A stretch of DNA of 64,000 bases, from sequence record MK250019.1; one strand, 5' to 3'. Within the stretch, counting starts at the first letter, position 1, and each line of letters opens with the position of its first letter. The position numbers were made by a program, and so were the translations under genes. Shown piece after piece: positions 1 to 64,000 of this stretch. The notes under the pieces were generated by a model. That model was not told the DNA's origin and did not search any database. It saw nothing but the letters and a program-made list of their open reading frames with translations.

Positions 1-1
1 A

Positions 2-1396
2 AAAGGACTTAAAATCATATCTTTAAATAAAAAATGTCCAGATTTTCTTACATATATAAGAAATAGATTTACTGACACTACAGGTAATGAAATGGTTAGA
101 GAATTAATTTATAGAATTGAATATGAAATAGAAGAGCATCCTAAATGTCCAGTATGTGGAAAACCTCTTGCATTTTATAAACGAGAATGGAAATATAAAA
201 GTTTCTGTTCTCAAGAATGTAAAAATTCAGATAAAGGTAAAGAAATAATACAATAGAAAACAGTAGAAACAAATTTAAAACGATATGGATGTGAAGTTAG
301 TTCATAGAATAAAGAAGTAAAAGAAAAAATGAAGCAAACATGTTTAGAAAAATATGGTGTTGATTGTACTCTTAAAGATAATGATATAAAAAATAAAACA
401 ATAAATACATGGTTATTAAATTATGGGGTTTCACACCCACATAAATCAGATAAAATTAAATAGAAGATTAAAGAAACATGTTNNNNNNNNNNNNNNNNNN
501 NNNNNCCATTTGAATTAAAAGAAATACGTAATAAAGCAAAATAGACATGTTTAAAAAAGTATGGTGTTGAATATGCTATGCAAAATGAACAAATTAAAAA
601 GAAAAATAAAGATACATGTTTAAATAATTATGGTGTTGAATATGTCACTCAAACTGAATTATTTAAATAGAAATCTAAAGAATCATGTTTAAATCGATAT
701 GGTACTGAATATGTAATGTAGTCTGATTTATTTAAGAAACGCACAAAGCAAACATGTTTAGAAAAATATGGAGTTGAATATATTATGCAATCAGATATAT
801 TTAAATAGAAATCTAAGCAAACATGCATAGAAAAATATGGAGTTGAATATCCAATACAATCAGATATATTTAAATAGAAATCTAAACAAACATGTTTAAA
901 TCATTTTGGATGTGAATACCCAGCGTAGAATAAAGAGATTATGTTAAAAGTATTTAATACACGTATTAAATTAAGTAAAGGAAAATGCTTTTCAAAAAAA
1001 GAAAATGAAATATATGATTATTTAATTACATTAGATAAAGATACTAAAAGATAGTATTATTCAGAATTATATCCATTTCATTGTGATTTTTATTTACCTA
1101 AATATGATTTATACATAGAATATCAAGGTATGTGGACGCATGGAAAACACCCTTTTAATAAAAATGATGAAAATGATATAGAAATACTTAATAATTGGAA
1201 AATTAAATCAGAAGCAAGTAAATTTTATAAAAGCGCTATACAAAATTGGACTATAACCGATCCATTGAAAAGAAAAACAGCGAAAGATAATAAATTAAAT
1301 TATTTAGAACTATTTCCTAATGATTTATATAAAGATAAGATAAATAATTACTTAAATAAGTTAATATTGAAAATAAATATTAAAAATATATATTAA
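2..1396 (+). CDS. Free-standing homing-endonuclease-like protein (5' truncated by window edge): Zn ribbon, KxTCLxKYGVEY repeats, C-terminal PD-(D/E)xK/Vsr-like nuclease; code 15
   Basis: Frame 2 is open from base 2 to TAA 1394-1396 when TAG=Gln. It contains CPVCGK...FCSQEC, about 10 repeats of KQTCLEKYGVEY and C-terminal YPFHCDFYLPKYDLYIEYQGMWTHG. It spans N-gap 483-505 in frame. Confidence 0.75.
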
Positions 1397-1401
1397 CTTA
1401 A

Positions 1402-2139
1402 ATGACAAGATCTGAATTTATAGAATACCTAAAATCAGAAATTACAATGAGTNNNNNNNNNNNNNNNNNNNNNNNNNNNNNNNNNNNNNNNNNNNNNNNN
1501 NNNNNNNNNNNNNNNNNNNNNNNNNNNNNNNNNNNNNNNNNNNNNNNNNNNNNNNNNNNNNNNNNNNNNNNNNNNNNNNNNNNNNNNNNNNNNNNNNNNN
1601 NGAATAGGTGTATTAAGTTTCCGGATTGTGTTTTAAGTGTTGTTCAATTTATGGAGCTCAAACGTAAAAATTCCATGTGGGGTATTGCAGACCCGGATTT
1701 ATCATGGAATCGAATGTTTCAGACAGATATGTGGATGGGACCATAGATGGCAATGGATACTGTTATGTTTAGAACTATATAGTGGTCTAATTGGGATTAG
1801 TTGAAGCAGTTTAATTTGGTTGATATAAAGCATAGATGGAATAGACCTACACATTAGTTATTTGTAATTGGACATGATCCATATAATGATGTATATTGTG
1901 AATTAGCAACAAAGGTAGATGATTAGGATTTATTTGAAGATCCTTGGGTTAGACAATGGATTGCAGCTAAGTGTAAATTATAGGTAGTAAAGAAATTAGG
2001 TACATTTACAGTAACAGCGATTGGAGGTGTAACAGTAAATACTGGAACATATTCTGAAGAAGCGAATAATGATATAAATGATTGTAAGGAATATTGGAAA
2101 ACTCTTTAGCAAGCAGACTTTTTTGAAACTGGATATTAA
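1402..2139 (+). CDS. Neck/head-completion protein, T4 gp13-like; code 15
   Basis: Reading through TAGs gives C-terminal WVRQWIAAKCKLQVVKKLGTFTVTAIGGVTVNTGTYSEEA, resembling T4 gp13 WVKDYATAL...GGVTIDG. It ends at TAA 2137-2139. N-gap 1453-1601 lies inside. Confidence 0.7.
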
Positions 2140-2263
2140 TTTATTGATTAACAAATAGTTAATATATGTGATATAGGATATTATATTTTAGATGATTAAA
2201 ATATAGTATCCTATATTTTTATAAAATAAATAATGTAAATTTAATAATAGATTTAAATAAACA

Positions 2264-3694
2264 ATGGGATATAAAAGATATGGTAGTAGTGAGTCTGTAC
2301 CAACGTTTAATGATGATAATAATGGGGAAGTTGTTTCAAATGGTATTTTAAAAAATTCATCAAAGAAAGAAATATATTTTGGTATTAAGAAACCAAAATC
2401 TGCTGCAGATTCAGATAAACCTTGGCGAGAATTAACAACAGATGATTTTGATACATAGATAACAAGTGAAACTGGTGGATGTTCAGCAACAATAACAAAA
2501 AATGATAATGATACCACAAATAAAGCAGGTATAATTAGATATATATTATCTAAAAATACAACAGGTAGTAGTAGGTTAATAACATTTAAATATAAAGGTA
2601 CAACATTATTTGAAATAAATTAGGCTGCAGGTCCAGTAGATAATAATACATATGTATATTTAAGATATTGGGTATTTGATAAGTCAACATATGAAAATAT
2701 TATAACATCTGCAAATAATACTACTTAGTTATATCGTTTTTCTCTTGGCATTAACAAAGAAGATGATAATGCGTATATAAGTTATGAAACTTGGAAAACA
2801 TCTGGTAATATAATATATCATGTAACAAATAATGAAGATTTAACTAATATCTTTAATACAGCAACTTCGATAAAAAATTTAGTAGATAATGGAACATTAA
2901 CATATGTTGCAGGAAAAAATTTTGATAATAATACTATATCAAGTATTATAAAATTCCCAACAAAAATGTATGAAAATGAAAATACACTTATTTCTGTTAA
3001 TGATAATAGTATTGTATACATATATAGTGGCAAATATGAAGCAACTGCTGATGCAAATGATTATTATTTTGATAAAAATAATATACATAGCATTATAAAT
3101 TGGGGAAATATTAATAATGATAATGTTACATCTATTGGAAAATATAGATATAATAAAAAATTAGTAATAAAAAAAACATATGAAATTTATATGTTTAAAG
3201 TATTAACTAGTTGGTTTACTTCACATGGTAATGAAGCATTTTTATTTGTACCGACTAGTGATAGTAGGTATACATCAATCTCTAAAGAAAATGCAGATAT
3301 AGATAGATGGGGTTATACATCATTTCCAGTAAGAGAAGACAGAAATAAACTATATACATATTTCTTTGTAGAAACAACAAATACTTTAACAATCAATATG
3401 CTTTCTGGTAAAACATTAAAAGAATTAAAAGATAATTATAATTTAACAAAAGTTTCTGGAAATATGTATGAAGAAGATGATACTTATGTAAATAATATAT
3501 CAGATAAAGTATTAGTAAATCAATGGAATACTATTATACATAAAACATTAAATAAAAATACAGCAACAGATACTGTTGCTGTAGCATGGTTATATGCTTC
3601 AAATGGTTCAGAAATTTATACAAACGCAACATCAAGTAATAGTGTAATAATTGATATGAATAATCCTTCAGGAATATATAATATTACAGTATAA
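2264..3694 (+). CDS. Putative virion surface protein with BACON-like Ig domain (476 aa, code 15)
   Basis: ORFs 2264..2458 and 2966..3694 are the same frame, joined across TAGs. It has GCSATI...AGIIRYILSKNTTGSSRLITFKY, a BACON-like N-x(4)-R signature. Confidence 0.55.
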
Positions 3695-3700
3695 TATTAA

Positions 3701-3788
3701 ATTCGTTATTCAAAAAACATTGAATAACGATTTTTTTATTTATGTAATTTAAGTTGCAGGATCTTATATTTAGACGTATATATAAAAA
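3701..3788 (+). repeat. Intergenic terminator plus leader module, copy 1
   Basis: Hairpin TCGTTATTCAA/TTGAATAACGA followed by TTTTTATTTATGTAATTTAAGTT; imperfect direct repeat of 4654..4742. Confidence 0.75.
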
Positions 3789-3799
3789 ATGAATTTTCC

Positions 3800-4648
3800 A
3801 TGGCAAATTATAAACAAGTTTCTAACATTGGTATAGAAACAATTTCAGCAGATACACATACAAATGAAACATTAAAAGCACATTATCAAAGTAATGATTT
3901 ATAGACTATATATTTTGGATTAAAAGATGATAATGGTAATTATGAAGGTAAGTTAATAGAATCTTCTTATGAATTAACATCTACAATACCTGGATGTTCT
4001 GCAACTATTTCTACTATTGATTTAACAAAAACTGCAGGAATTATTAAATATACGATTTCTAAAAATACAACAAGTAGTGCAAGATTAATAACCTTTAAAT
4101 ATAAGAATACTGAATTATTTAAAATAAATTAGGTTGATACTAATACATTAATATATAATTCTGAATATGTATATGTATGTACGGTTGGTAATATATCAAG
4201 TGCACCTAATAAAATATGGTTATTTGCTATACTTGCTGAAAATGGTAGTTTACCTAATAAGTCAGATTTATTAAATAATTATAAAACAATGGTGCAATTT
4301 GATAGTTCATATGCAGGAGATAATCGAAAAAATGGTAGAACATTGTATTTTTCAGAGAAAACGTTACCTGCAAATAAAACAATACAGGAATTAAAAAATA
4401 GTGCGGTATTAACAGTTGTTAGAGAAAATAAAGTTAAGTATGATACAGATATTCCTTATCATTTAGTACTAGTAAATAATAATGCATATAATGCACCATA
4501 TAATATTTAGTCTAACATTGAAGACGCATTTAAAACTCCATATGAGATGTATGTTATAAATTAGAGTGATACTGTTATTTCATATTAGAAGACAATATTT
4601 AATATATTTGATTATTATTATTGTGGTATATATAAATTTAATTCATAA
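3800..4648 (+). CDS. Paralog of 2264..3694, BACON-like domain protein (code 15)
   Basis: ATG 3800 is open to TAA 4646-4648 with TAG=Gln. GCSATIS...AGIIKYTISKNTTSSARLITFKYKNTELFKINQ aligns with the previous gene. Confidence 0.6.
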
Positions 4649-4653
4649 TAATT

Positions 4654-4742
4654 ATTCGTTATTCAATTTGTTTTTAAATAACGAATTTTTTATTTATGTA
4701 ATTTAAGTTACTGGATTTCATATTTAGGCGTAGATATAAAAA
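4654..4742 (+). repeat. Intergenic terminator plus leader module, copy 2
   Basis: Hairpin ATTCGTTATT/AATAACGAAT, then the same 23-nt core and a similar tail as copy 1. Confidence 0.75.
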
Positions 4743-4757
4743 TATATTTTAATTTTT

Positions 4758-5591
4758 ATGTCAACATATAAAGAAACAACAGAACGAGAATTTCATATAA
4801 TTAATTTTATAGATAAATCATTAGTTACATTTACGCCTGATCCAAATATAGATACGAAAGGACTATTAGTAAAAGGTGTAAGTGTAAAGGATTCAAATAA
4901 AAAAGATGTTTTTATAGGATTAACTGATGGCACAAAGTTTAAATATTTAACTAATGATGATTATAACATCTATTATCAATCTGGTGATACAATATATGTT
5001 ACTAAATATGCAGGTTCACAAGGTTGGCCTATATACTTGGATGTTTATAAAGAAAATATAGGGATAATAGGACATGTAAAATATTCATATAATGGAGTAT
5101 ATGATTAGTTTTTTACTATCAATTACATACCATATGAAGTATTATTTATGGGTATTTATTATTCAGAAGATATAAGAAATGTGTATTTATTTAGTGAAAA
5201 ATTACCATCATCATATAGTGTAAGTCCATCTAAACATATAGCATTATATTCAAGTGCATCTGGTGATATATCATTATATGGTCCATATATATATTATGAT
5301 CCCATGAAAATATTAGGTGGTGATGAAAAAAGTATTGATGATTATGTTAATGAAGGTACAATAACATATAAATCTGGAAATGATTTCAATGCTAATATAA
5401 AAAGTATGTATACAATAGAAGTGACATTTGTAAATATACCAAATACAAATAAAGATACAATAGAAATAAGTGAAAAAACAGATATATATTGCTATGAATA
5501 TATTAATAATAAGTGGCAAACATATGGTTCTAGATCTTTTATATCACCAACACCATTAGTTTATAAGAGTGTTGCACATTATTCGAAATAA
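4758..5591 (+). CDS. Hypothetical beta-rich protein (277 aa, code 15)
   Basis: ORFs 4758..5108 and 5148..5591 are the same frame, joined through TAG 5106-5108. Confidence 0.65.
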
Positions 5592-5652
5592 TAAATTAAT
5601 ATAAAAAATATTCATGAATAAATAATAAAAAGTTATTTTTGATATATTTTTT

Positions 5653-6063
5653 ATGAAACATAATATTCCATTAAATATACTAGATGAATATGCAAAAACA
5701 ATTTCATCAAAATAGGTAAAAATGCTTTATGAATCAAAATGTAATAAAAAATTTAAGAAAGCATTATATGAAAATATGAAATATCAAAATGATAATAGTT
5801 TTTCAATATACTTAAATGATTTTACATTAGATGAAGCTCATTCATCTGTTGATAAAGCATTAGTACGTTATGTAAGGAAACATAAACTTCAATATAATAA
5901 AGTCAGCGATGGTGTTTATTTTTATACACCTCTTGAAGAAAATTATATTTCCTTATTAGAAAATCTTGTTCAAGACGGATTTGATATAGATTTATTAAAA
6001 GAAAATGTAGATTCACAAAAAGCTACAGTTTATTTAGAAAAATTAAAGTTAAATAAGAAATGA
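5653..6063 (+). CDS. Hypothetical, putative internal head protein (code 15)
   Basis: Extends upstream to ATG 5653 through one TAG; carries LYE motifs (LYESKC, ALYENM). Confidence 0.6.
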
Positions 6064-6743
6064 TAAAGATTAGAAGACGTAAACCTATTTTTGAGGATGA
6101 TTAGACTACATAGCAGCAACCAGCAACAACAGGTACAACAGCACAACCTGCTGCAACACCTGCTCCTGCAAATAATACAACAACTCCAGCTGCACCAACT
6201 CAGCCTCAGCAACCTGCTCAACCTAATAATACTAACACACCTCAGCAACCAGCAGATCAAAATAATCAACAGCAATAGCAACAACCTAATCCTAATGCTT
6301 AGAAAGTTGCAGATGTGTTGAAAAAAATGGAAAATACATGGTGGATGATTTCTGTTAATCTTCCTGATGAAATTCAAAAAGATATTCCAGATTTTAAACA
6401 AGGAAATCAATAGGCTGATAATGCTATTAAAGCATGGGGAACATTTAAGCAAAATCCGACAGAAGATACATTCAAACAATTCTTAGAAGGATTTAAAGCA
6501 TTTGGTGGTGTAAATAATGATTAGACAAATAATCAATAGAATGGTCAACAACCAGCTGCACCAACTCAGCCTCAACAACCTGCATAGCAACCAGCTCAAC
6601 CACAAACAAATGTTAACGCGGGATTAAAAGCTGCATATTCATTCAGAAAGAATCTTATGGAAAATCTTGAGATTGCAAATAAGAAAAAATATTATAATTC
6701 TGTTTGTGAAGATTATTTTGATAAAACTGAATTTACATTATAA
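6060..6743 (+). CDS. Gln/Pro/Ala-rich low-complexity protein (227 aa, code 15)
   Basis: ATGA overlap with the upstream stop. TAG sits inside poly-Gln runs (CAA CAG CAA TAG CAA CAA). Internal AAPTQPQQPA repeats; ends at TAA 6741-6743. Confidence 0.75.
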
Positions 6744-6765
6744 TAAAAATAAATGAATCTAAAAT

Positions 6766-7539
6766 ATGGTTAAAAAATATAAATATGTTTATAATCAAAA
6801 AACTGGACATTTTATAAAAAAACTAAATGAAGATGATTCAAATGTAAGTACAGATACACAACAATAGCAAAATAATAATTCTAATACTACTTCATCAACA
6901 ACTGATAATAAAGATACATCAACAAATAATACATCTTTTAAATCTGTTGAATCTGATGAAACAATTCAAAGTCTCAATGCAAAAATGCAAGATAATGAAA
7001 ATAAATTTCAATAGGATTTAAATACATAGCAGAAACTTTTAGATGCTGCTAAAGTTACTGCATCTAAAAAAACACCAACAGGACCATATGACCCTGTTGC
7101 AACAGATGCAGACGTATTAAATATCATGAAAAAAATAAATGATATTACTAAACAACATGCTATTGATATTGCAAATTTTCAAGATTAGAAATTAGCATAG
7201 CTATAGAAACTATCACAAACAAATGAATCATATTATAAAATTCCAGAAAAATATAAATGGTTAAACGAATCTAATATTCATACTGCAAAAATATATATGG
7301 GTGATCTTATAGCTCCAGATGATTAGCACATATTAAAAGGTATGGCTGATTTTAAGAGAGCTTTTAAAGATACAGATTTATTATATGGGAAAGACAGAAA
7401 TGGATACTTTCTTATCGCAGTTGATAAAGATGATATGACAAAAGCATTTGACACACTAGAAGAAATAGGATACCTTCGTGATGAAATAATTGATACAATG
7501 CTTCCATAGGTATTAGATAGGACAAAAATGATTTTATAA
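6766..7539 (+). CDS. Hypothetical protein (257 aa, code 15)
   Basis: Open from ATG 6766 to TAA 7537-7539 with TAG=Gln; absent from the standard-code track. Confidence 0.7.
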
Positions 7540-7546
7540 TTTAATT

Positions 7547-8320
7547 ATGCATTATATACAAGAAACAGATAATTTTAACATAAATCTTCCTTTGTATGGT
7601 TCATATTTATTATATAATCCAAATACAAAAGAAACTGTAGTTAAAAAATCACCGAATCCTAAATATATTTCTGTTGATACATTTATTGATGTTGCTAATG
7701 AACTTAAACAAATTGCAACTGATTTAAAAATTACACCTACTGAATTACCATTATTTCAATATATTAGATATAGTCGTTATAAAGATGCAACATGGACAAT
7801 TATTGCAGGTACAATAGATAATAATTTTAAACAAAAAGCAGATGTATCATATTCAATGGTTCCTAATATTCAATAGATGATTTTACCTTCAAAAGAAACT
7901 TTAGATTTTCCTCATTTTTGTGGAACTATAAACGGTTTAATAAAAGGACATGGTGATCTTTGTGGATGGGCAGGTGATGCAGTCGAATATGCAGCAGATT
8001 TAATGAAAGATTAGAATGCAGTATTTCCATCAGGTGGGTTTGACAGTGAAGATTTAAGAACTGATTTAGATGCTTATAATTTATATAATATTAGTAATAC
8101 AAATATTATAGATAATATAAAATCATATTATGAAAATATTACAGATAGTAAAAGAATTTCATTATTTTTAAAAGGTGGTGAAAATATTACTACAAGATTT
8201 AACAGTTCACCAGATATATTTTATCTTAATATATTAAAACAAAAGATGAATGTAACTGATGAATATATGACATTAGCATTAAATAAAATACAAACATATA
8301 TGAATAAAAATAAAGGTTGA
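7547..8320 (+). CDS. Hypothetical protein with DFxH...GWxGD...DLxxDxDAxN motif (code 15)
   Basis: Reads through TAG 7874-7876 to TGA 8318-8320; contains DFPHFCGTINGL...DLCGWAGDA...SEDLRTDLDAYNL. Confidence 0.65.
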
Positions 8321-8349
8321 TAATTTTTAATATTATCAACCTTTATTTT

Positions 8350-8997
8350 TTATAAACTTGCAATATATTTCTTTATACCTTCCACATGAATATCTGTAAT
8401 TATATTTCTACCTTCATTACTTAATAACCATGTAGCATCTTCTTTATTATCCATAAACATATTTTCTGTTAAACATGCAGGACATGTAGTTTTTGATAAT
8501 ACATAGTAATTTGCTTCCTGATCAGGATCACCATCTGAATTATCAGGACGTAATTTCTTACCCAATGGTTTTAATTTAGATTCGGCAACTTCATAGATAC
8601 ATGTTGATAATTTATCTGCAGATGTTTGTCCTTTACTTGTATATACAGACCAACCTTGTGCATTCATCCATGAACCATTTCCAGCGGCATTTACATGAAT
8701 AGAAATAAAAATTGCTTTATTTCCCTTTGCTTTTTCTTCAAGATATTTTTTATTAGCACGTTGAACTCGAAGATTTAAATCATAAGATTGACTTGTAATC
8801 TCTTCCACTTCAGGATGTGTAATATAACATCTATATCCTTCTGAAATTAACTTATTGTAAACTTCATATCCTATTGCACGAACATATGCATATTCTTTTA
8901 ACTATGTTTTACCATCGTCAAATACAGGACTGGATTTCCCTGGTGTATTACAACCATGTCCCATATCAAGCATTACTAAAACTTTACTCTTTTCCAT
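8350..8997 (-). CDS. N-acetylmuramoyl-L-alanine amidase (Amidase_3), probable endolysin; one in-frame TAG
   Basis: MEKSKVLVMLDMGHG...Q(TAG 8902-8904)LKEYAY...ISIHVNA...ACLTENMFMDN supplies the Zn ligands H, E, H and the catalytic E. Confidence 0.9.
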
Positions 8998-8999
8998 AA

Positions 9000-10475
9000 T
9001 TAATACATCTTATCATATAATTTAAATGTAAATACTGATAATTCTTTTAAGCAATTATTACTTAAACAAACACCATCTCCAGCAGCAGTTGGTGCCAAGA
9101 AATTTTTATAATTATCAGAAATACTCTTATTTACTTTAATTGTTTTTCTATCTCTCTTTCCTTGTTTAATTTCTTCTTTACATCTATTTAAAATTGATGT
9201 GAGATTATCATATATATTTTGTACATCTTCTTTCTTCAACATATAAACAATATAATCAATATTACTTGTTCCAATATATCTAGGAAATAAAATATATTGA
9301 ATATTATCATCAGATAATATATCTAATTCTCCTTTTCTTGAAATATTAATTCTAAAATTATCTTCGCTTGATTTACGTCTCTATGCAACAGCAATACTAA
9401 AAACAGATGGAAATCCAGGAGCATTATTAATATTTCTTACTATAAAATCTTGATTTCCTCTTCTTGCAGATTTATTGAAAAATGTAGATTTACCAAATTT
9501 TTTCATAAGCACACCATTCAATCTTTCCTTTAAATGTGTAGATGAATTATTATGTGAATAATCATATCTATCTTCATTTAAACTACGTTTAATACTAACT
9601 GCAATAGATTCAATTAATGATTTATATAACTAATTATTATTCATTTTTTCTGATACCTATTTTAATTTATTTATTGTATTTTTATCAATAATTGCATAAT
9701 CATCTCCATCATATCGTATTTCAGAATTATCAGCTAATATATCAAAAAACTTAGGATTCTTTTTATCAAATTGATATATAGGTATATTATCTATACATGT
9801 TGTACATGTATTTACAAATACTTTATTAAACTGTTTAAGTAATGAATTAAGTAATGAAATACATGTAGTTTCATCCTATATAGATAATTGTCTTACATAG
9901 ACTATATTCGCTATACATTCTGATTTTATATTTAATAATTTTGGAAAATTACAGGCAAATCCATCTGATATTGTATAATCATTATTTGTCTTTACTCTTT
10001 GCTTATTATATATTACACAAAAAGAATCTCTTACATTATTATATGTAATGTCATCATAACCATATATAATTTTATCTGTTATAATATCATATTCATCATA
10101 TAATATATTTGCAAATTTTATGATATAAAAATCATCATCACTTATACGCGTTTTATTGGTACTATACATATATGGATAAACCTATATATATTCTATTCTT
10201 GTATAATTATTATTAAATTTAAATGTTAAATAAATACAATCAGGATTAAATGGTAATTTTACATTATCATATGTTAACTATTCTCCTTTATTATAATCTT
10301 TGTAACAATCTTTATCTAACATAATTAAATAATGATCATATATCTCATAGGATACTTTCATCCAATCAATTTCTCTAGCAAATCTATGTGCAATCTCTTC
10401 TACATCATTAGATAATATAGATGATGTTAAAATATTATTATCATCATTAAAATCTATATCATTAAATAAATCCAT
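9000..10475 (-). CDS. Hypothetical protein (491 aa, code 15); possible internal second start at 9644
   Basis: ORFs 9000..9242, 9876..10169 and 10278..10475 are one frame with only TAG interruptions (translated codon by codon in the gaps). Confidence 0.65.
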
Positions 10476-10505
10476 TAAAATAAACTACTATTTTAAATAT
10501 TTATT

Positions 10506-10847
10506 TTAAAAGGGTAATTCTTCTCCAGGTTCCATAGGTAAAAATGAAAGTGTTGGAATTATATTATGTTTTCTAAAATACTTTTTATGCATTTTCTTTG
10601 CAGTTCTCCATTCTCTTATAGATTCTCTTGAAACAGAAAAACTTGGACAATTTGCACAAATATCAAATATATTTTTATTTAATTCATTTTCAATTTCATA
10701 TACTGGTCTATTATCATAACTTGGTTGACGAGAACAACAAAACCAATTAATATACATAGGATATGGATCATCTGTTACCATATCATCAAATGACTTATCA
10801 TGTGCGCATTTACAACCACAAAATTTTTTTCTTAATCTACTTTTCAT
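10506..10847 (-). CDS. Small Cys-rich hypothetical protein
   Basis: TAG-free ORF with CGCKC, FCCS and CANC; TAA stop. Confidence 0.6.
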   Translation of the reverse strand: MKSRLRKKFCGCKCAHDKSFDDMVTDDPYPMYINWFCCSRQPSYDNRPVYEIENELNKNIFDICANCPSFSVSRESIREWRTAKKMHKKYFRKHNIIPTLSFLPMEPGEELPF

Positions 10848-10918
10848 ATTTGTTTAATTTAAAATATCATATAACATTTATATAATAATAAATCTATTAA
10901 TGTTTGTTAAATTTTACT

Positions 10919-10926
10919 TATAAATA
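10919..10926 (+). promoter_or_regulatory. T4-type late promoter TATAAATA upstream of terminase
   Basis: Exact T4 late consensus, 27 nt before terL ATG. Confidence 0.6.
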
Positions 10927-10952
10927 TGTTAAATGCTAAATAATTTAATTAT

Positions 10953-13106: not shown

Positions 13107-13142
13107 AATAAATATATTAATAATTTAATAAAATTTAGATAC

Positions 13143-14673: not shown

Positions 14674-15264
14674 ATGAGAATAACCACATTAAACCAATTA
14701 AAAGAATATACTACATATACATATTATAAATTAAATAAACCTGAATATACAAAAAAGAAAAAAGTTTATATTTGTCAACCTATTAACTATATAGATGAAG
14801 GATGTACACATATGGATATATGGTCAGGATATATATTTTATAAAACTAATGCAGTTTCCAGGAATGTAGGTTATTATGGTTTTTTATTAGATAAAGAATC
14901 AGATGAAACATATAATAATATAATTAAAAAACAACCAAAATATCTTGGTAAAATTTCACCTATGTGGTATGTAAATACTACATTGTATAATATACAATCT
15001 GAAGAAAATTGTAAGTTATATAAAAATCTGAAATTAGAAGAAAATCTATTAACTGAAAATAATAAAGCTATATTTACAGATAAGCATGAAATAGAACAAT
15101 ATATAGATGATATAAGAAATAATATCATTAAGATTCCAGAAGTAGAACATATTGTTACAATGAAAACATGGTATAATGATAAAGATGGAAATAAAATAGA
15201 AGAAACATCAGTTAGACATTTACCAAGTGGGAAAACAGATATAATAAAAACAATAATAAAATAA
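14674..15264 (+). CDS. Hypothetical protein
   Basis: 196-aa TAG-free ORF followed by terminator hairpin AAAGTCTTCAC...GTGAAGACTTT. Confidence 0.6.
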   Translation: MRITTLNQLKEYTTYTYYKLNKPEYTKKKKVYICQPINYIDEGCTHMDIWSGYIFYKTNAVSRNVGYYGFLLDKESDETYNNIIKKQPKYLGKISPMWYVNTTLYNIQSEENCKLYKNLKLEENLLTENNKAIFTDKHEIEQYIDDIRNNIIKIPEVEHIVTMKTWYNDKDGNKIEETSVRHLPSGKTDIIKTIIK

Positions 15265-15352
15265 TGTTAAAATTTAAAGTCTTCACATGCCGTTGTGAAG
15301 ACTTTTTTATTTATTATTATATAAACACTAATTAACTATATTTTTATAAAAA

Positions 15353-16489: not shown

Positions 16490-16491
16490 TA

Positions 16492-17187: not shown

Positions 17188-17191
17188 TAAT

Positions 17192-17374: not shown

Positions 17375-17389
17375 TAATTAAATAAAAAT

Positions 17390-20553: not shown

Positions 20554-20564
20554 TAAAAATATAT

Positions 20565-45544: not shown

Positions 45545-45602
45545 TTGCTTGAATTTAAATGTTTTTATTTATTATTTTATTTATCTATGTTTTTATAAAA
45601 AA

Positions 45603-46055: not shown

Positions 46056-46099
46056 AATTAAANNNNNNNNNNNNNNNNNNNNNTAATGTATTTTAAAAA

Positions 46100-47737: not shown

Positions 47738-47750
47738 AACTTATATTCAT

Positions 47751-50387: not shown

Positions 50388-50499
50388 TTAATTAAAAACT
50401 TTGTTTTCATATTTATTATTGAAAATAAATTATCTCATTTTTATAAATAAAAAATAAGGAATTAGAATATCAGCAAATTCTAATTCCTTATTATATTTT

Positions 50500-52375: not shown

Positions 52376-52406
52376 TAAAATAAATACTTAAACATATATC
52401 TGATAT

Positions 52407-54293: not shown

Positions 54294-54389
54294 TATATAA
54301 GAGGATATGGATTTAATTCTATATTCTCTTTTTTCTTTCAAATAAAATATGTATCTTTGTATAAAATATGAATTAATAATTATAAGAGA

Positions 54390-55643
54390 ATGGATACAAA
54401 AACATATATGGCAATTAAAGATTGCCTTAGAATAATTATTCAAGGATCTGAATTTGAAAATAATTTATTTGCTGTTGGCGGATGTTGTAGAGATGAGATT
54501 TTAGGAAATAATATAAAAGATTTAGACCTTGTTGTTTCATTAGAAAATGGCGGTATTAAATTTGCAGAATGGTTGGAAAAGAATCATTATACAAAAGGAA
54601 CTGTTGTGACATATCCTCGATATGGAACTGCTATGTTCAGACTAAAGGATTTTCCTAATGAAGAACTTGAAGTTGTACAAACAAGAACTGAAATTTATAC
54701 AACAGATTCAAGAAAACCAGATACAACATTCGGTTCACTTAAGCAGGATTGCATGCGTAGAGACCTTACAATCAATGCAATTTATTATGATATTTCAAAC
54801 AGTAAATTTATTGATGTTACAAACAGATCATTTGATGACATTAAAAATAAAATTATTGTAACACCATGTGAACCAGATCAGACATATATTGATGATCCTC
54901 TTCGCATTATGAGATGTGTAAGATTTGCATGTAAACTTGGTTGGAATATAGATAAAAATGTATTCAACAGTATGAAGAAAAATATAGATAGACTATCTAT
55001 TATTTCAAAAGAAAGAATACAGGATGAACTTATGAAAATATTGAATACACCAAATTCAAAATTAGGTATTGATTATCTATTTGATATTGATGCAATGAAA
55101 TTTATTTTCCCTTGTATAAATCATAATATTCCTGGACATTTTATTGATTTAGATAAGACATATAAACCTTATTTAAAATTAGCATTAATTAATATTAATA
55201 ATTCTAATGTTAAAGAAGATTTAATTAATCTTAAATTTTCTACATATGAAATTAATACAATAATGAATTATATTAATTTATATCATGATATGTCGAAAAT
55301 TAATAATCAATCATCACCCAGTGATATTAGACGAATGTTATATAAATGCAAAACATTAAATATATTCTTTGATGTATATAACATGATAGTAATATATGAA
55401 TCAAATAACAATAAATTAAAATCAATTCATGATGCTATTTCGAAAGGAATAAATTGTAATGATTTAATTAAGATGTTTGAATATAAGTTACCGGTTAATG
55501 GTAATGATATTATGGATGCATTTAATATTAAACCAGGACCAAAAATTAAAGAATATCTTGATAAAAGTTTTGATATTGTCTTTGATAATCCTTATATAAC
55601 AAAAGATGAAATTTTAAATAAGTTAAAAGAGATTAAAAATTAA
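54390..55643 (+). CDS. cca: CCA-adding tRNA nucleotidyltransferase (class II)
   Basis: AVGGCCRDEILG...KDLDLVV, DCMRRDLTINA, DDPLRIMRCVRFA; promoter TATCTTTG at 54352. Confidence 0.88.
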   Translation: MDTKTYMAIKDCLRIIIQGSEFENNLFAVGGCCRDEILGNNIKDLDLVVSLENGGIKFAEWLEKNHYTKGTVVTYPRYGTAMFRLKDFPNEELEVVQTRTEIYTTDSRKPDTTFGSLKQDCMRRDLTINAIYYDISNSKFIDVTNRSFDDIKNKIIVTPCEPDQTYIDDPLRIMRCVRFACKLGWNIDKNVFNSMKKNIDRLSIISKERIQDELMKILNTPNSKLGIDYLFDIDAMKFIFPCINHNIPGHFIDLDKTYKPYLKLALININNSNVKEDLINLKFSTYEINTIMNYINLYHDMSKINNQSSPSDIRRMLYKCKTLNIFFDVYNMIVIYESNNNKLKSIHDAISKGINCNDLIKMFEYKLPVNGNDIMDAFNIKPGPKIKEYLDKSFDIVFDNPYITKDEILNKLKEIKN

Positions 55644-55694
55644 AACAATTTATTGGTTAAACATTATAAACATTAATTAAAACAGTTATTAGAT

Positions 55695-55844
55695 ATGGAT
55701 TTAAATATTACACAGAGAGAAGGAATTAAGAAGTGTCTCTATGAGGATTTAAAGAAAATGTATGATGCATTTATTTTGACTGATAGAGATAAAGTAGAAA
55801 GTGTATTTAATGAGTTTTTGAATAAATGTGAACGTTATATTTAA
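55695..55844 (+). CDS. Small hypothetical protein (49 aa)
   Basis: ATG 55695 to TAA 55842-55844, filling the gap between genes. Confidence 0.45.
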   Translation: MDLNITQREGIKKCLYEDLKKMYDAFILTDRDKVESVFNEFLNKCERYI

Positions 55845-55850
55845 TTTGAT

Positions 55851-56249
55851 ATGAATTATTTTACTCATACAGTAGATGATAATATTTGTAAGTGGTTACT
55901 CGATAATAAGTTTCCACTTACAAAGTGTATACGAAATGATCATAATGAATCATTATATTATACATTGCCATATGAAGATTCTGATGGATGGCAATATTGT
56001 GATGCATATTATAAACCTACATATTTTGATGTAAAAGAATGGTTATATAAAGAACATAATATACTTATTAATTCGAATATTTATACTGATAGATTTTCTG
56101 TACAAATTAGATATAAATCAAAATCAGATAAGTATTTTGGAAATTGTTGGGAAATTGGTTATGGTTGTAAAACATTTGAAGATTGTTTAAAATCTGCAAT
56201 TGAATATATTATTGAAAATAATATACTGAACGAAAAGAGTACAGAATAA
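55851..56249 (+). CDS. Hypothetical protein
   Basis: YKPTYFDVKEWLYKEHNILI family motif. Confidence 0.6.
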   Translation: MNYFTHTVDDNICKWLLDNKFPLTKCIRNDHNESLYYTLPYEDSDGWQYCDAYYKPTYFDVKEWLYKEHNILINSNIYTDRFSVQIRYKSKSDKYFGNCWEIGYGCKTFEDCLKSAIEYIIENNILNEKSTE

Positions 56250-56254
56250 TTTAA

Positions 56255-56797
56255 TTATGTTAATGGATGAAATATTTCTTTTTGTTCTTTAATATATTTT
56301 TTTGCTTCAGGTAGATTATCAAATAAAATATCATTTTCATCTGGTTGACAGTAAACCATATTTCCATCATCTTCTATAATATAGATAATACCGAATGTAT
56401 CTTGCATTGATGTTGGTTCAATTGGTTTACTGAATATGATTTTTCTTATTTGATTATCTACAATTACATAGTAAATATTTGCATTTGCATCTATATTACT
56501 AGTCCATTTACCGATATAATTTATTTTATCATCATATGATGATAATTCATTATTCATGACATTATCACCGAAAAATGAAGCTAAGTAATTATTATTTGCA
56601 TTTACTTTATCTATGTTATCTCTAATAAGTCCATCAGATGTTAAATTAATTTGAGATTTATTATCATCTGGATAAAAATATCCACCTATTATAATATCAT
56701 CAAATTCATCATTATCTTCTTTTGGATTTAACAACATATCAGATAAGTTATTTAACTGCGGAATATATTTATGTAATAATTTATAGGTATATTTCAT
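56255..56797 (-). CDS. Hypothetical protein
   Basis: 180-aa TAG-free ORF, isolated on the minus strand. Confidence 0.55.
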   Translation of the reverse strand: MKYTYKLLHKYIPQLNNLSDMLLNPKEDNDEFDDIIIGGYFYPDDNKSQINLTSDGLIRDNIDKVNANNNYLASFFGDNVMNNELSSYDDKINYIGKWTSNIDANANIYYVIVDNQIRKIIFSKPIEPTSMQDTFGIIYIIEDDGNMVYCQPDENDILFDNLPEAKKYIKEQKEIFHPLT

Positions 56798-56835
56798 TTA
56801 ATTTATTATATATAAACTTTAAAATATTTATTTAT

Positions 56836-57150
56836 ATGATTATAACATATACAGCATTTGATGGAAAGGTATTTAATGATCAAAAGGAATGTGAAGACTA
56901 TGAATATAAATTAAAACTTTTAGGAGTTGCATATTCAGAATTCAGTAAATTTCTTGATAAAATTCCAGAAGATTATAATGATAATCTTTGGATATGTAAA
57001 GAAAAATTAGAAATTAATGATGCATGTGGACAAGAACTTCCTACAATTGGAGATACTATAAAGGTTTTAACAAAAGATGATTTATCACATATGAGAGTAA
57101 TTAAGACTCTGCTTAAAAATTTTAAATTGGATGATAATGGAAACAACTAG
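56836..57150 (+). CDS. Hypothetical protein
   Basis: ATG 56836 (MIITYTAFDGKVFNDQKECEDYE) is preferred to the track start, which overlaps the minus-strand gene. Confidence 0.6.
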   Translation: MIITYTAFDGKVFNDQKECEDYEYKLKLLGVAYSEFSKFLDKIPEDYNDNLWICKEKLEINDACGQELPTIGDTIKVLTKDDLSHMRVIKTLLKNFKLDDNGNN

Positions 57151-57685
57151 AAATGTTATAGATAAAATTAAATATCTATATAAAAGGTTATATAAAGCCG
57201 AATTATTTTCTTCATCGTTAGCAGTTCGTATGAATGAGCGTGATGACTTTTATGAATATTCTAGACAACATCAACCTGCGTTTAAGATAGCTATGATGGA
57301 ATTACTTAGTCATCCAGATGAAATGAATGCTCGTATTCCTTTTTACTGTTGTTATATATTACGTGAAAATGATTTTCTTAAATTATATGAAAATAAAAAG
57401 GATAAATTACCTTTAAATGAAGATTATGAATGGGATGAATGTAATTTATGGTTGAATCATTTTAAATCAACAAAAGATATAGATTACTACAAAGATTACA
57501 AAGAATATAAAAGATATTTAAATTTGAATTTTAAACTATTTAATCCATTTACTGGTAAAGATCCAAATCCTACATATGAAGAATATATCAGAAAAAGAGA
57601 TTCTATCGATTCAATAAATAAATTTGTAACTAAATTAATAAAAGATAATAATATAAAGATAACATGGAAGTACGAGACGAAGTAA
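57131..57685 (+). CDS. Hypothetical protein
   Basis: 184-aa TAG-free ORF overlapping both neighbours. Confidence 0.6.
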   Translation: MIMETTRNVIDKIKYLYKRLYKAELFSSSLAVRMNERDDFYEYSRQHQPAFKIAMMELLSHPDEMNARIPFYCCYILRENDFLKLYENKKDKLPLNEDYEWDECNLWLNHFKSTKDIDYYKDYKEYKRYLNLNFKLFNPFTGKDPNPTYEEYIRKRDSIDSINKFVTKLIKDNNIKITWKYETK

Positions 57686-58017
57686 AAAAGCGTATGGAAG
57701 AATCGTTAAAAGGATGTAAGATTATAGATAAACAAGACACACCTAAAACTACAATACTTCCAGATCTTTCAGATCCTGCTGAATATAAAAGATGGTTTAA
57801 TATGGGTCCAAAAGAAGCAATGGTAAATCTACAAAAATATGTTGATTTAAACAAGAAAGATAATATTAACTTTGAAACGGAGTTTAACTATCTTTATACG
57901 AATGGTGGAATTTGTGGATGGAATAAAATACCATATACAACATTTTATAATATTATATATGGTAAACAGCGTGTTGATTTTAATGGTAATTTAACAGGTA
58001 ATTTAACAAATAATTAA
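57664..58017 (+). CDS. Hypothetical protein
   Basis: 117-aa TAG-free ORF. Confidence 0.55.
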   Translation: MEVRDEVKKRMEESLKGCKIIDKQDTPKTTILPDLSDPAEYKRWFNMGPKEAMVNLQKYVDLNKKDNINFETEFNYLYTNGGICGWNKIPYTTFYNIIYGKQRVDFNGNLTGNLTNN

Positions 58018-58019
58018 AC

Positions 58020-58166
58020 ATGAATGTAGAACGAGCATTATTAAAATTAAATAAATTAAAATCTGAAATGGAAGTAGAATGCTTTTATAATACCAATGTT
58101 GAATATAAAGCAAAACCATGGTTAGAATTGGTGGAAGATACTATAGCATTTTTAGATGGTAAATAA
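58020..58166 (+). CDS. Small hypothetical protein (48 aa)
   Basis: ATG 2 nt after the upstream stop; TAA 58164-58166. Confidence 0.45.
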   Translation: MNVERALLKLNKLKSEMEVECFYNTNVEYKAKPWLELVEDTIAFLDGK

Positions 58167-58181
58167 AATTTATATAAAGTT

Positions 58182-58535
58182 ATGTCATATAATTTAATAC
58201 CAAAATATTATACATTATATCCTGAGTGTTCAAGTTCAACTTATTTATATTTTCATGATGAACCTTATGCTTATTGGTTAGAGAATAGTGAATATAAAGT
58301 TTATGAATGGGTTTTATTTAAAGAATATAATGATTATAAATCTGTCTGTCATCCAAATGATTGTATATCTGCAATAAGTTATAATGATCTTATTGATTCA
58401 TTTAAAACATATTCATTTTATGAGAATATGGATCGTGAAAAGATGTGCAGAACATTTAGACAAAGATCATTAGAAACAGAATTTGGACCTGAATCTGAAC
58501 CTTATTGGGATTTTGAAGATTTTGTTGATGAATAA
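58182..58535 (+). CDS. Hypothetical protein
   Basis: 117-aa TAG-free ORF. Confidence 0.55.
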   Translation: MSYNLIPKYYTLYPECSSSTYLYFHDEPYAYWLENSEYKVYEWVLFKEYNDYKSVCHPNDCISAISYNDLIDSFKTYSFYENMDREKMCRTFRQRSLETEFGPESEPYWDFEDFVDE

Positions 58536-59529: not shown

Positions 59530-59759
59530 AAATAATATAATTTTTTATTATATTTATACAGATAGAAAATGTTTTTATACAATCTCATAACTTAATAAAC
59601 ATAACTTAATTATTATAAAATAAACATCACTATTATTAAAACTTAATAATTTTAATAAAATTCTATTAAAATAACTAAAATTTTATTAGTTTTTTAATAT
59701 AATTTTGATAATATTTTTCAACCAGTATATAGTATCTGTGATTAATTATTTTATACTAA

Positions 59760-61694: not shown

Positions 61695-61753
61695 ATTTTA
61701 TAATTAAAAATTAACTTTTTATTATTTATTAAAAAGAAAAGATACAAGTTATA

Positions 61754-62944: not shown

Positions 62945-62989
62945 TTTTTATTTTAGATTTATTTTAATACATATTATAATGAAACTGTA

Positions 62990-63349
62990 TTAAAAAGTCT
63001 TTTTAAAATTAATCAAAGATTCAGTTATATTTATAATTGTATCTCCTTTATAAACTGTTTCATTGAAATGATATTCATCTATAAGTTTCCCTTGTTTTGT
63101 CCGTATATTTAATTTCACATTAAAATTTAAAACATCATTATCTTCATCAGACACAATTAAATATTCATCATCAAATTTCATAATTACATGATGTTCAGAA
63201 TGTTCGTCTCCTATTAATACATTTAAATTGGTTATACAATAATTTTTAATTTTATTCTTTACAATAACATTAAATCTTTTATCTGATAATTTTCGCTCAT
63301 TATTTTTATTACCATTAAAAATATTTCTTAATAACGTAATCAATTTCAT
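62990..63349 (-). CDS. Hypothetical protein
   Basis: 119-aa TAG-free ORF with TAA stop. Confidence 0.55.
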   Translation of the reverse strand: MKLITLLRNIFNGNKNNERKLSDKRFNVIVKNKIKNYCITNLNVLIGDEHSEHHVIMKFDDEYLIVSDEDNDVLNFNVKLNIRTKQGKLIDEYHFNETVYKGDTIINITESLINFKKTF

Positions 63350-63434
63350 TTATTCTTAACAATTTATTTTCACCTAAAAATAAAAAGGAATATACTATCA
63401 CAATATATTCCTTTTATTTTATATATTTTGTCTT

Positions 63435-63986
63435 TTATTTATATTTAACCATATAATTAAATACCTGATCAAATGTTGATCCAATTGACCAGAAATTTTT
63501 TATATCTTTTATACTTTCATCTGCTACTATAACTGTTGTATCATAAAATTCATTATCATAAACTTCAGTTAACATTCTTAATTCATCACTTATTATACAA
63601 ATGGTATTTTCTGTTTGAAATTGTCTTGTTAACTTCAATTCTTTATCATCATTATATAAATTATATGGATATTCTTTATAAATATCGATAATAGGATTTA
63701 TAGCAATGAGATTTCCATCATAAAAAGATTGTAACCAGAAGTATGCTGCAGGTCCATCTGTTATAACACATGCATATTTGTCTATACATGCATATATAGT
63801 TTCAGAATCAATTTCCATCTGTATGTTTTCTGGCACATAATTATATTGTTTCTGTATATCATTAAATAGTTTAAAGACTATATCATAATTATCACCATAA
63901 CAAAATTTTATTTGTTCTATAAACATATTATAACGTTTATCAGTATTATAATCATGATCAAGAATAATTAAGATTTTTTGTTTCAT
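63435..63986 (-). CDS. Hypothetical protein
   Basis: 183-aa TAG-free ORF with TAA stop, followed by a terminator hairpin near 63384-63416. Confidence 0.55.
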   Translation of the reverse strand: MKQKILIILDHDYNTDKRYNMFIEQIKFCYGDNYDIVFKLFNDIQKQYNYVPENIQMEIDSETIYACIDKYACVITDGPAAYFWLQSFYDGNLIAINPIIDIYKEYPYNLYNDDKELKLTRQFQTENTICIISDELRMLTEVYDNEFYDTTVIVADESIKDIKNFWSIGSTFDQVFNYMVKYK

Positions 63987-64000
63987 AATTCAAAACATAT

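What the first reader, a model, noticed from the sequence alone, without database searches (positions are those of the whole stretch)
1..64000. TAG=Gln recoding is block-structured and tracks with two promoter classes
Seen: TAG aligns with CAA in repeats (ATG TAG TCT at 716-724 versus ATG CAA TCA at 785-793), lies in poly-Q runs (6060 gene) and occupies the terminase RDYQ motif (11274). Structural, lysis and nuclease genes carry TAG and often follow (T/A)ATAAATA. Blocks 14674-24189, 25353-30487 and 54390-58535 have no TAG, either as sense or as stop, and are interspersed with TATCTTTG promoters. Established: code 15 with TAG enriched in late genes is known in Lak and crAss-like phages. Here the promoter-code coupling can be read directly from the sequence.
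Basis: partly seen in the sequence, partly recalled or inferred. Interest (0 to 1): 0.65.

Follow-up and report, generated by a model that had tools for sequence, protein, structure and literature searches.

The report
Promoter classes track TAG recoding in Lak megaphage
In this gut megaphage, which reads the TAG stop codon as glutamine, genes without TAG sit behind host-type or sigma-70-like promoters and genes rich in TAG sit behind T4-style late promoters, so the timing model for phage stop-codon recoding becomes readable from sequence and testable.

Summary
The window is Prevotella megaphage Lak-A2 (MK250019.1, record 261866-325865). TAG read as Gln, the TAG-free versus TAG-rich blocks, RF2 and tRNA-CUA were already published for this genome (Devoto 2019; Borges 2021).

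The promoter coupling is real and I found no prior report of it. For first genes of at least 100 aa, 1 of 33 behind TATCTTTG carry in-frame TAG, against 81 of 99 behind (A/G/T)ATAAATA (p=1e-16). The effect extends to whole transcription units. Both motifs are retained at orthologous sites in Lak-B4.

Refinements:
- TATCTTTG fits the Bacteroidetes sigma-A -7 consensus.
- ATAAATA is a T4-type late promoter, and the genome has one gp55-type late sigma, itself carrying three in-frame TAGs.
- A third class, AGACT-N17-TATAA, precedes mostly TAG-free genes and the likely code-switch genes (a suppressor tRNA, RF2, tRNA arrays).
- The major capsid gene is TAG-free, so "structural genes carry TAG" is not a strict rule.

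No transcript-start data exist, so promoter function and timing are inferred.

The parts
1..14660 (.). TAG-rich region (15 of 16 called genes carry in-frame TAG), including the amidase 8350-8997(-) and the terminase
10953..13106 (+). T4-type large terminase with 18 in-frame TAG. The TAG at 11274-11276 is the Q of the RDYQ ATPase motif.
14674..24189 (+). TAG-free block 1 (13 genes: aldolase-like, ABC ATPase, OmpA-domain protein and others). Orthologs in Lak-B4 are also TAG-free.
25353..30487 (+). TAG-free block 2, beginning with RF2
25353..26489 (+). Release factor 2 (prfB model 406 bits, cut-off 370). One ORF, no in-frame TAG, SPY in place of the SPF tripeptide.
54390..58535 (.). TAG-free block 3, beginning with a CCA-adding tRNA nucleotidyltransferase behind an E promoter
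30539..50387 (.). TAG-rich region (115 TAG in 10 genes) in divergent operons started by L motifs
18517..18524 (+). E-class core TATCTTTG, preceded by terminator 18462-18496
23230..23237 (+). E-class core, preceded by terminator 23180-23208
23813..23820 (+). E-class core, conserved in Lak-B4
26547..26554 (+). E-class core just after RF2
28851..28858 (+). E-class core, preceded by terminator 28775-28807
54352..54359 (+). E-class core before the CCA-adding enzyme gene, conserved in Lak-B4
10919..10926 (+). L-class TATAAATA, 34 nt before the terminase ATG. The core is conserved in Lak-B4 while the flanks have diverged.
13107..13114 (+). L-class AATAAATA before gene 13143-14660 (9 TAG)
10498..10505 (-). 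L-class AATAAATA before 9000-10475 (6 TAG). The amidase gene lies downstream in the same unit.
2225..2232 (+). L-class AATAAATA before 2264-3694
5617..5624 (+). L-class AATAAATA before 5653-6063 and the poly-Q gene 6060-6743
38004..38040 (.). Back-to-back L-class pair (38004-38011 on the minus strand, 38033-38040 on the plus strand) driving the two divergent TAG-rich operons. Both are conserved in Lak-B4.
45566..45585 (-). L-class GATAAATA and AATAAATA before 45068-45544
50410..50417 (-). L-class AATAAATA before 47751-50387 (9 TAG)
52379..52386 (+). L-class AATAAATA before 52407-53399 (8 TAG)
59551..59558 (-). L-class TATAAATA before 58606-59529 (3 TAG)
56825..56832 (-). L-class AATAAATA before the TAG-free gene 56255-56797 (an exception). 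Conserved in Lak-B4.
61723..61730 (-). L-class AATAAATA before the TAG-free 644-aa gene 59760-61694 (an exception; P of no TAG is 0.005). Conserved in Lak-B4.
24203..24228 (+). M-class site (GACA-N17-TATAA; TAGACA/TATAAT is 11 of 12 to the sigma-70 consensus), upstream of tRNA-Leu, a 5-TAG gene and RF2. Mask 24276-24301 lies in between.
24432..24518 (+). tRNA-Leu(UAA)
27899..27924 (+). M-class site before the TAG-free gene 27969-28532
62974..62999 (-). M-class site before 61754-62944 (10 TAG, an exception). The -35 part is changed in Lak-B4.

Best explanation
Lak-A2 runs a temporal programme in which promoter class and codon repertoire are matched.

(1) About 54 near-identical E promoters have the core TATCTTTG, which fits the Bacteroidetes primary-sigma -7 consensus TAnnTTTG, and each usually sits right after an intrinsic terminator. 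I infer that unmodified host RNA polymerase reads them. They drive genes with essentially no in-frame TAG, which host ribosomes can translate under the standard code.

(2) A second set, the M promoters (AGACT, 17 nt, TATAA), also precedes mostly TAG-free genes. It sits upstream of the likely code-switch parts: a suppressor tRNA-CUA, the RF2 operon in this window, the large tRNA array, and the operon holding the late sigma.

(3) L promoters have (A/G/T)ATAAATA with no -35 element, placed 25-44 nt before start codons. This is the T4 late-promoter architecture. I infer that the phage's single gp55-type late sigma reads them. They drive units that hold 76% of all in-frame TAG, including terminase, portal and the lysis amidase operon. 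Those genes give full-length protein only once TAG is decoded as Gln.

Shown here: the motifs, their positions, their statistical coupling to TAG, their conservation in Lak-B4, and the presence of gp55-like sigma, RF2 and tRNA-CUA. Inferred: that the motifs are promoters, which sigma reads which class, and the order in time.
For: - Code 15: ORF cover rises from 0.50 to 0.93.
- TAG as Gln: the RDYQ TAG aligns to the Q of T4 gp17. Internal repeats pair TAG with CAA. Where TAG has changed between Lak-A2 and Lak-B4, CAA/CAG is the commonest partner. tRNA-CUA_1 is most like the phage's own tRNA-Gln(CUG). Published evidence agrees.
- Blocks: 409 TAG-free genes against 222 expected; 150 runs against 230+-10.
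- Unbiased discovery: AATAAATA splits 54 to 18 (p=8e-10) and TATCTTTG splits 2 to 38 (p=3e-8). They are also the most enriched upstream 8-mers.
- Position and strand: 37% of all AATAAATA copies lie 20-49 nt before a start codon in sense orientation, against 3% for the reverse complement and a 7.8% median for composition-matched 8-mers. There is no -35 signal.
- First genes of at least 100 aa: 1 of 33 (E) against 81 of 99 (L) carry TAG, p=1e-16.
- Whole units: TAG share 0.059 (E) against 0.335 (L); 0 of 5000 permutations reach the observed difference.
- Footprint in Lak-B4: the L core is kept at 10 of 11 orthologous sites and E at 3 of 3, often within diverged flanks. Per-gene TAG status is conserved.
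- E and L genes share GC, GC3 and synonymous codon usage (r=0.98), so the TAG-free genes are not recent imports.
- Late sigma: phrog_234 'late sigma transcription factor' E=9e-11. The only PDB hit is T4 gp55. There is a single copy in the genome.
- T4-type terminase, portal and capsid are present.
- T4-family late consensus is TATAAATA at -13 to -6, with A or T at -13 (PMC1524935). The Bacteroidetes -7 consensus is TAnnTTTG (PMC7366714).
- M class: 34 sites at 17-nt spacing against 1-8 at every other spacing from 11 to 23. Its targets are listed.
- RF2 is confirmed as prfB.
Against: - There are no transcript 5' ends. The only public RNA data are assembled contigs, which cannot show starts and may include DNA.
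- 112 of 268 inferred units have no recognised promoter.
- Exceptions exist. Five long TAG-free genes sit behind L motifs. The capsid gene is TAG-free. Several TAG-rich genes lie inside E or M units.
- The gp55-like gene has no clear promoter of its own and follows a terminator.
- No T4-type clamp was found with the Pfam models.
- A generic sigma-70 scan is at chance level in this AT-rich DNA, so the M class rests on the spacing peak alone. Of the four M or M-like sites I could compare, one is conserved in Lak-B4, and the site before 18964 and the -35 part of 62974-62999 are not.
- The upstream TTTG of the E motif is only 12 nt from the core and overlaps the terminator T-tract, so the -33 element is not established.
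Confidence: 0.7

Rival explanations
1. TAG avoidance follows expression level or translational accuracy rather than timing. Genes that need high or reliable output avoid a codon that is decoded in competition with host RF1, and the promoter classes differ mainly in strength.
For: The most abundant virion protein (gp23-type capsid) has no TAG and uses CAG 24 times against CAA twice. Five long genes behind L motifs are TAG-free, with P of no TAG between 1e-4 and 0.04.
Against: E-unit genes include many small genes of unknown function that are still TAG-free. The E core matches the host sigma-A consensus and the L core matches a late-sigma consensus. L units contain the classic late functions: terminase, portal, amidase. 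The two ideas are not mutually exclusive.
Confidence: 0.12
2. (A/G/T)ATAAATA is not a promoter but an element of the mRNA leader, such as a processing site or translation enhancer, that late-gene leaders share.
For: The motif was defined by its distance to start codons, not to transcript starts. There are no TSS data.
Against: At 25-44 nt from the ATG it is too far away to be a ribosome-binding site. Identity to the T4-family late -10 element together with a gp55 homolog in the same genome is a specific match. It often sits directly after terminators or at divergent gene pairs such as 38004-38040.
Confidence: 0.1
3. The blocks reflect modular ancestry. TAG-free modules were imported from standard-code organisms together with their own promoters, and there is no regulatory logic.
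For: Block 1 carries host-like auxiliary genes: aldolase, ABC ATPase, OmpA-domain protein.
Against: GC, GC3 and synonymous codon usage are the same in E and L units (r=0.98). TAG-free status persists in Lak-B4 orthologs at 40-94% protein identity. The 54 E promoters are near-identical copies across the genome, which is not what diverse imports would give.
Confidence: 0.04

Closest known systems
Stop-codon recoding in Lak and other gut phages (Devoto 2019, PMC6784885; Borges et al. preprint 10.1101/2021.08.26.457843)
   Same: This is the same genome. TAG as Gln, TAG-free large regions, TAG in structural regions, RF2, tRNA-CUA, and the model of early standard code followed by late alternative code are all published.
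   Different: Those papers never use the word 'promoter'. New here: the three motif classes, their coupling to TAG, the TAGs inside the late sigma gene, and the TAG-free capsid gene.
T4-type late transcription (gp55 late sigma, TATAAATA at -13 to -6, gp33, gp45)
   Same: The core motif is the same, there is no -35 element, and A or T is tolerated at the first base. A gp55-family protein is present. Terminase, portal and capsid are T4-type. Lak-B8 is placed in the T4-like jumbo group 2.2, with a minimal sigma and gp33 (PMC7824862).
   Different: The host is a Bacteroidetes member with an unusual primary sigma. G is accepted at the first base. The late sigma gene carries three in-frame TAG. A T4-type clamp was not detected.
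Bacteroidetes primary-sigma promoters (-7 TAnnTTTG, -33 TTTG)
   Same: The E core TATCTTTG fits TAnnTTTG exactly.
   Different: E sites are about 37 nt of near-identical sequence. They are fused to an upstream terminator, and a TTTG lies only 12 nt upstream of the core.
Code-15 crAss-like phages (Peters 2022, PMC9523058)
   Same: TAG as Gln, enriched in late genes, in phages of Bacteroidetes hosts. Supported by metaproteomics (abstract).
   Different: These are a different phage order with a different transcription apparatus. I did not examine promoter coupling there.

Membership tests
Genetic code 15 phage (TAG read as Gln) | Coding density and ORF length recover when TAG is read as sense | tested here: met
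   Cover 0.50 to 0.93; longest ORF 644 to 1386 aa
Genetic code 15 phage (TAG read as Gln) | In-frame TAG aligns with Gln in homologs | tested here: met
   RDYQ against T4 gp17. Repeat copies pair TAG with CAA. Lak-B4 partners of changed TAG are led by CAA/CAG.
Genetic code 15 phage (TAG read as Gln) | Phage-encoded tRNA with CUA anticodon | tested here: met
   Two genes at record 144866-144938 and 145771-145845, outside the window. The first resembles the phage tRNA-Gln.
Genetic code 15 phage (TAG read as Gln) | Release factor that does not read TAG (RF2) | tested here: met
   Window 25353-26489; prfB 406 bits over a cut-off of 370; RF1 models below their cut-offs
Genetic code 15 phage (TAG read as Gln) | Peptides with Gln at TAG positions | not testable with these tools
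   No proteomics for Lak. Shown only for crAss-like phages (PMC9523058).
T4-type late promoter / gp55 regulon | Short conserved ATAAATA-type -10 element without a -35 element | tested here: met
   120 sites; information content is confined to the 8-mer plus two A's downstream
T4-type late promoter / gp55 regulon | gp55-family late sigma encoded | tested here: met
   phrog_234 E=9e-11. Only PDB hit is T4 gp55, 7D7C_F, E=0.037. Unique in the genome and absent from 14 control genomes.
T4-type late promoter / gp55 regulon | Motif lies at -13 to -6 from the transcript start | not testable with these tools
   Only assembled contigs are available
T4-type late promoter / gp55 regulon | Sliding clamp gp45 and co-activator gp33 | tested here: inconclusive
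   Pfam gp45 models found nothing. gp33 orthologs are reported for the jumbo group that holds Lak-B8 but were not searched here.
T4-type late promoter / gp55 regulon | Drives late (virion, packaging, lysis) genes | tested here: met
   Terminase, portal and the amidase operon are in L units. The capsid gene has L-type motifs only further upstream.
Bacteroidetes sigma-A promoter | -7 element TAnnTTTG | tested here: met
   Core TATCTTTG in 52 of 54 PWM sites; consensus from PMC7366714
Bacteroidetes sigma-A promoter | -33 element TTTG at the usual distance | tested here: inconclusive
   A TTTG lies 12 nt upstream of the core and overlaps a terminator T-tract
Sigma-70-type -35/-10 promoter (M class) | Two hexamers at a preferred 17-nt spacing | tested here: met
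   AGACT-N17-TATAA: 34 sites against 1-8 at other spacings
Sigma-70-type -35/-10 promoter (M class) | A cognate sigma with regions 2 and 4 | tested here: inconclusive
   Two phage candidates exist: 316 aa, TAG-free; and 338 aa, RpoD-like with 4 TAG. Which one, if either, reads M sites cannot be told.

The most novel reading that the evidence does not exclude
The code switch sits upstream of late transcription and gates it. The gp55-type late sigma (three in-frame TAG inside its conserved domain, at the same positions in Lak-A2 and Lak-B4) and the RpoD-like sigma (four TAG) can only be made full-length once the suppressor tRNA-CUA is active. L promoters would therefore fire only after the change of code. 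The M promoters would form a dedicated 'code-switch' middle regulon (suppressor tRNA, RF2, tRNA arrays, late-sigma operon). If so, stop-codon recoding would be a checkpoint wired into the transcription cascade as well as a translational lock on late proteins.
Probability: 0.3. Interest if true: 0.8.

Novelty: new variant of a known kind. Interest (0 to 1): 0.6.

Why it matters
The current model for phage stop-codon recoding says that early genes use the host's code and late genes use the phage's code. For these uncultivated phages it rests only on gene-function correlations.

Showing that TAG use partitions with distinct promoter classes gives an independent, sequence-level read-out of timing. 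One class is host-type and one is T4-late-type with its sigma encoded in the same genome.

It also supplies concrete test objects: about 54 E, 30-60 M and 110 L sites, one late sigma, RF2 and two suppressor tRNAs. These can be taken into in vitro transcription, reporter assays or TSS mapping. The motifs could further be used to predict gene timing in other Lak genomes, and to ask whether the same coupling exists in other recoded phage clades.

Tried and rejected
- GACTTT k-mer. My first version of the third motif was an enriched GACTTT k-mer. It was partly an artefact of terminator stems followed by T-runs. I replaced it with the spacing test.
- Generic sigma-70 scan. 150 matches against 157 expected, so it carries no information in 74% A+T DNA.
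- Public RNA runs. All are held as contigs. Contig breaks at 54329-54362 reflect the repeated E sequence, not transcript ends. Result: inconclusive.
- Pfam and PHROGs on the large TAG-rich genes. Almost nothing came back, apart from a weak head-closure hit for 34716-36266. 'Structural' is therefore unverified for most window genes.
- T4 clamp. Pfam models gave no hit. The tail sheath model PF04984 also gave no hit.
- Rfam on the window. Only the tRNA was found.
- TAG conservation in the late sigma. The three TAGs are conserved between A2 and B4, but the expected chance of that is about 0.44 given 31 synonymous changes in 129 codons, so it is uninformative.
- Own assembly. It is not held. I used the deposited record for the parts outside the window only. 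The Lak-B4 loci I fetched stop short of the places that correspond to the masks at 24276-24301 and 46063-46083.
- The large protein searches were not needed and were not run.

Full report
**Identity and masks**

The window is 100% identical to Prevotella phage Lak-A2, MK250019.1 (541,299 bp, circular, human faeces), record positions 261866-325865. G+C is 25.9%.

Six anchor points on both sides of all four N runs map to the record with one offset, 261865. The N runs therefore keep the true length and frames across them are comparable. I did not read the masked letters. Of the same record I fetched only the parts outside the window (L001-L011). The Lak-B4 loci I fetched stop short of the places that correspond to the masks at 24276-24301 and 46063-46083.

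**The observation**

- Reading TAG as sense raises ORF cover (100 aa or more) from 0.50 to 0.93 and the longest ORF from 644 to 1386 aa.
- The TAG at 11274 aligns with the conserved Gln of LRDYQ in solved T4 gp17.
- The three blocks have no in-frame TAG, apart from one doubtful ORF at 56836. They carry 86, 37 and 23 CAA+CAG codons, which gives P=3e-15, 6e-7 and 1e-4 under uniform use. All their stops are TAA or TGA.
- TAG is common in the other two frames, so the avoidance is at codon level.

**What was already known**

Devoto et al. [quoted passage not shown] Crisci et al. 2021 infer Gln from terminase alignments. Borges et al. propose early standard-code genes followed by late recoded genes.

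None of these papers contains the word 'promoter'. Further searches found no promoter analysis of a recoded phage. Iyer et al. 2021 place Lak-B8 among T4-like jumbo phages that lack an RNA polymerase and encode a minimal sigma, an RpoD-like sigma and gp33.

**Genome-wide test**

I joined the window to the rest of the record and called 660 ORFs under code 15.
- TAG-free genes number 409 against 222 expected. TAG status is clustered along the genome: 150 runs against 230+-10.
- I compared all 8-mers upstream of genes with and without TAG, using no prior. The two best discriminators were AATAAATA (54 against 18, p=8e-10) and TATCTTTG (2 against 38, p=3e-8). These are also the most enriched upstream words.
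- (A/G/T)ATAAATA peaks 25-44 nt before start codons. 37% of all AATAAATA copies lie in that 30-nt zone in sense orientation, against 3% for the reverse complement and a 7.8% median for composition-matched words. No -35 signal accompanies it.
- For first genes of at least 100 aa, 1 of 33 behind TATCTTTG and 81 of 99 behind the ATAAATA motif carry TAG (p=1e-16). In the window alone the figures are 0 of 5 against 11 of 14 (p=0.005).
- When genes are assigned to units by the nearest upstream promoter, E units have a TAG share of 0.059 and L units 0.335. L units hold 76% of all TAG. No TU-level permutation out of 5000 reaches the observed difference.
- Many apparent exceptions are my own over-long start calls: 25 of 56 single-TAG genes have the TAG in the first tenth of the ORF.

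**Conservation**

Against Lak-B4 (about 82% DNA identity):
- TAG status is kept gene by gene. All orthologs in block 1 are TAG-free in both phages, at 40-94% protein identity.
- 90 TAG codons are shared. Where TAG has changed, CAA/CAG is the commonest partner (23 of 71 and 22 of 77), followed by Lys and Glu codons. CAA/CAG codons show the same spectrum.
- The L core is kept at 10 of 11 orthologous sites and the E motif at 3 of 3, often within diverged flanks.
- E-unit and L-unit genes have the same GC, GC3 and synonymous codon usage (r=0.98). The only clear difference is TAG, at 1.4 against 11.4 per 1000 codons. This speaks against recent import of the TAG-free genes.

**What the motifs are**

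E class. TATCTTTG fits the Bacteroidetes primary-sigma -7 consensus TAnnTTTG. The 54 E sites share about 37 nt and are usually preceded by an intrinsic terminator. Terminator-like sites in 14000-31000 number 12 against 2.5+-1.6 expected, and three of them abut E sites.

L class. The ATAAATA motif equals the T4-family late promoter, described as TATAAATA at -13 to -6 with A or T at -13. The genome has one gp55-type late sigma at record 153610-153996, minus strand, 128 aa from Met34.
- phrog_234 matches at E=9e-11.
- The only PDB hit is T4 gp55.
- It is unique in the genome and absent from all 14 control genomes.
- It carries three in-frame TAG inside the matched domain, at the same positions in Lak-B4. 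The chance expectation of that conservation is about 0.44, so it proves nothing on its own.

Terminase, portal (6 TAG, L promoter) and capsid are all T4-type.

**A third class**

AGACT-N17-TATAA occurs 34 times (21 intergenic), against 1-8 times at every other spacing from 11 to 23. The sites lie mostly 50-70 nt before start codons. 16 of 22 downstream genes of at least 100 aa are TAG-free.

They precede the gene just upstream of tRNA-CUA_2, the operon holding the late sigma, the TAG-free 316-aa sigma, and the large tRNA array. In the window one lies at 24203-24228, upstream of tRNA-Leu, a 5-TAG gene and RF2. The RF is RF2. It is one ORF and has SPY where RF2 normally has SPF.

Which sigma reads this class is open. 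Conservation in Lak-B4 is mixed.

**Limits**

- There are no transcript starts. The RNA libraries found are held as contigs and are inconclusive.
- 112 units have no assigned promoter.
- The capsid gene and five long genes behind L motifs are TAG-free.
- Some TAG-rich genes sit inside E or M units. Several of these look like mobile endonuclease genes.
- CAA+CAG frequency is equal in E and L genes, so TAG comes on top of normal Gln content. I cannot explain this.

**Verdict**

The recoding and its block structure are already published for this genome. The promoter classes, their tight coupling to TAG use, the third class linked to the code-switch genes, and the TAG-bearing late sigma appear to be new and are testable.

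Noticed in passing
window 51374-51452: A 79-nt stretch in the gap before the Dam methylase gene appears at very high depth in contigs of all four metatranscriptomes (up to about 600x). The flanks in those contigs are unlike the window. It has no Rfam match. It may be a small RNA, or a piece shared with an abundant host RNA.
   Followed up: partly
window 52404-53357: Contigs from two runs join 52422 to 53333, and 52404 to 53357, skipping about 910-950 nt. So relatives exist that lack gene 52407-53399 (8 TAG, own L promoter). That gene and gene 47751-50387 are 99% identical to Lak-B4 while their neighbours are 50-95% identical, which suggests recent exchange or mobility. The next gene, 53406-53879, has a Hint/intein domain.
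   Followed up: partly
L003:44866-45845 (record 144866-145845): The two tRNA-CUA genes flank a TAG-rich (10 TAG) gene of 256 aa whose protein has GIY-YIG-like motifs, so it is possibly a homing endonuclease.
   Followed up: no
L005:11337-11409 (record 211337-211409, minus strand): ARAGORN calls a tRNA with anticodon UUA, which would read TAA. TAA is the main stop codon here (579 of 660 ORFs), so this is either a false call or something odd.
   Followed up: no
L003:42605-42997 (record 142605-142997, minus strand): ARAGORN calls a phage-encoded tmRNA with a 10-residue tag peptide ending in AA.
   Followed up: no
L010:35975-37960 (record 511840-513825, minus strand): The gp23-type major capsid gene has no in-frame TAG in its 650-aa open frame. 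It uses CAG 24 times and CAA twice, the reverse of the genome-wide preference (CAA 2664, CAG 1150).
   Followed up: partly
window 25353-26489: The phage RF2 has SPY where RF2 normally has its SPF stop-recognition tripeptide. It is encoded as one ORF, with no frameshift needed to read it through.
   Followed up: partly
window 92-1396 and at least 7 other loci in the record (near 122k, 157k, 166k, 434k, 436k, 439k, 472k): A multi-copy gene family with internal repeats (Pfam DUF7487). All copies seen here are in or near TAG-using regions.
   Followed up: no
record 134215-134541, 167937-168113, 220077-221219, 258235-258726: Four E-unit genes have a single TAG within the last 6% of the ORF. These could be real TAG stops that would be read through after the code switch.
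   Followed up: no
genome-wide: CAA+CAG frequency is the same in E-unit and L-unit genes (about 22-23 per 1000 codons). TAG codons (11.4 per 1000 in L units) therefore add to Gln content rather than replace it.
   Followed up: partly
window 18462-18524, 23180-23237, 28775-28858: E promoters are fused to an upstream intrinsic terminator, whose T-tract forms the T-rich part of the E consensus. This makes insulated terminator-promoter cassettes.
   Followed up: partly
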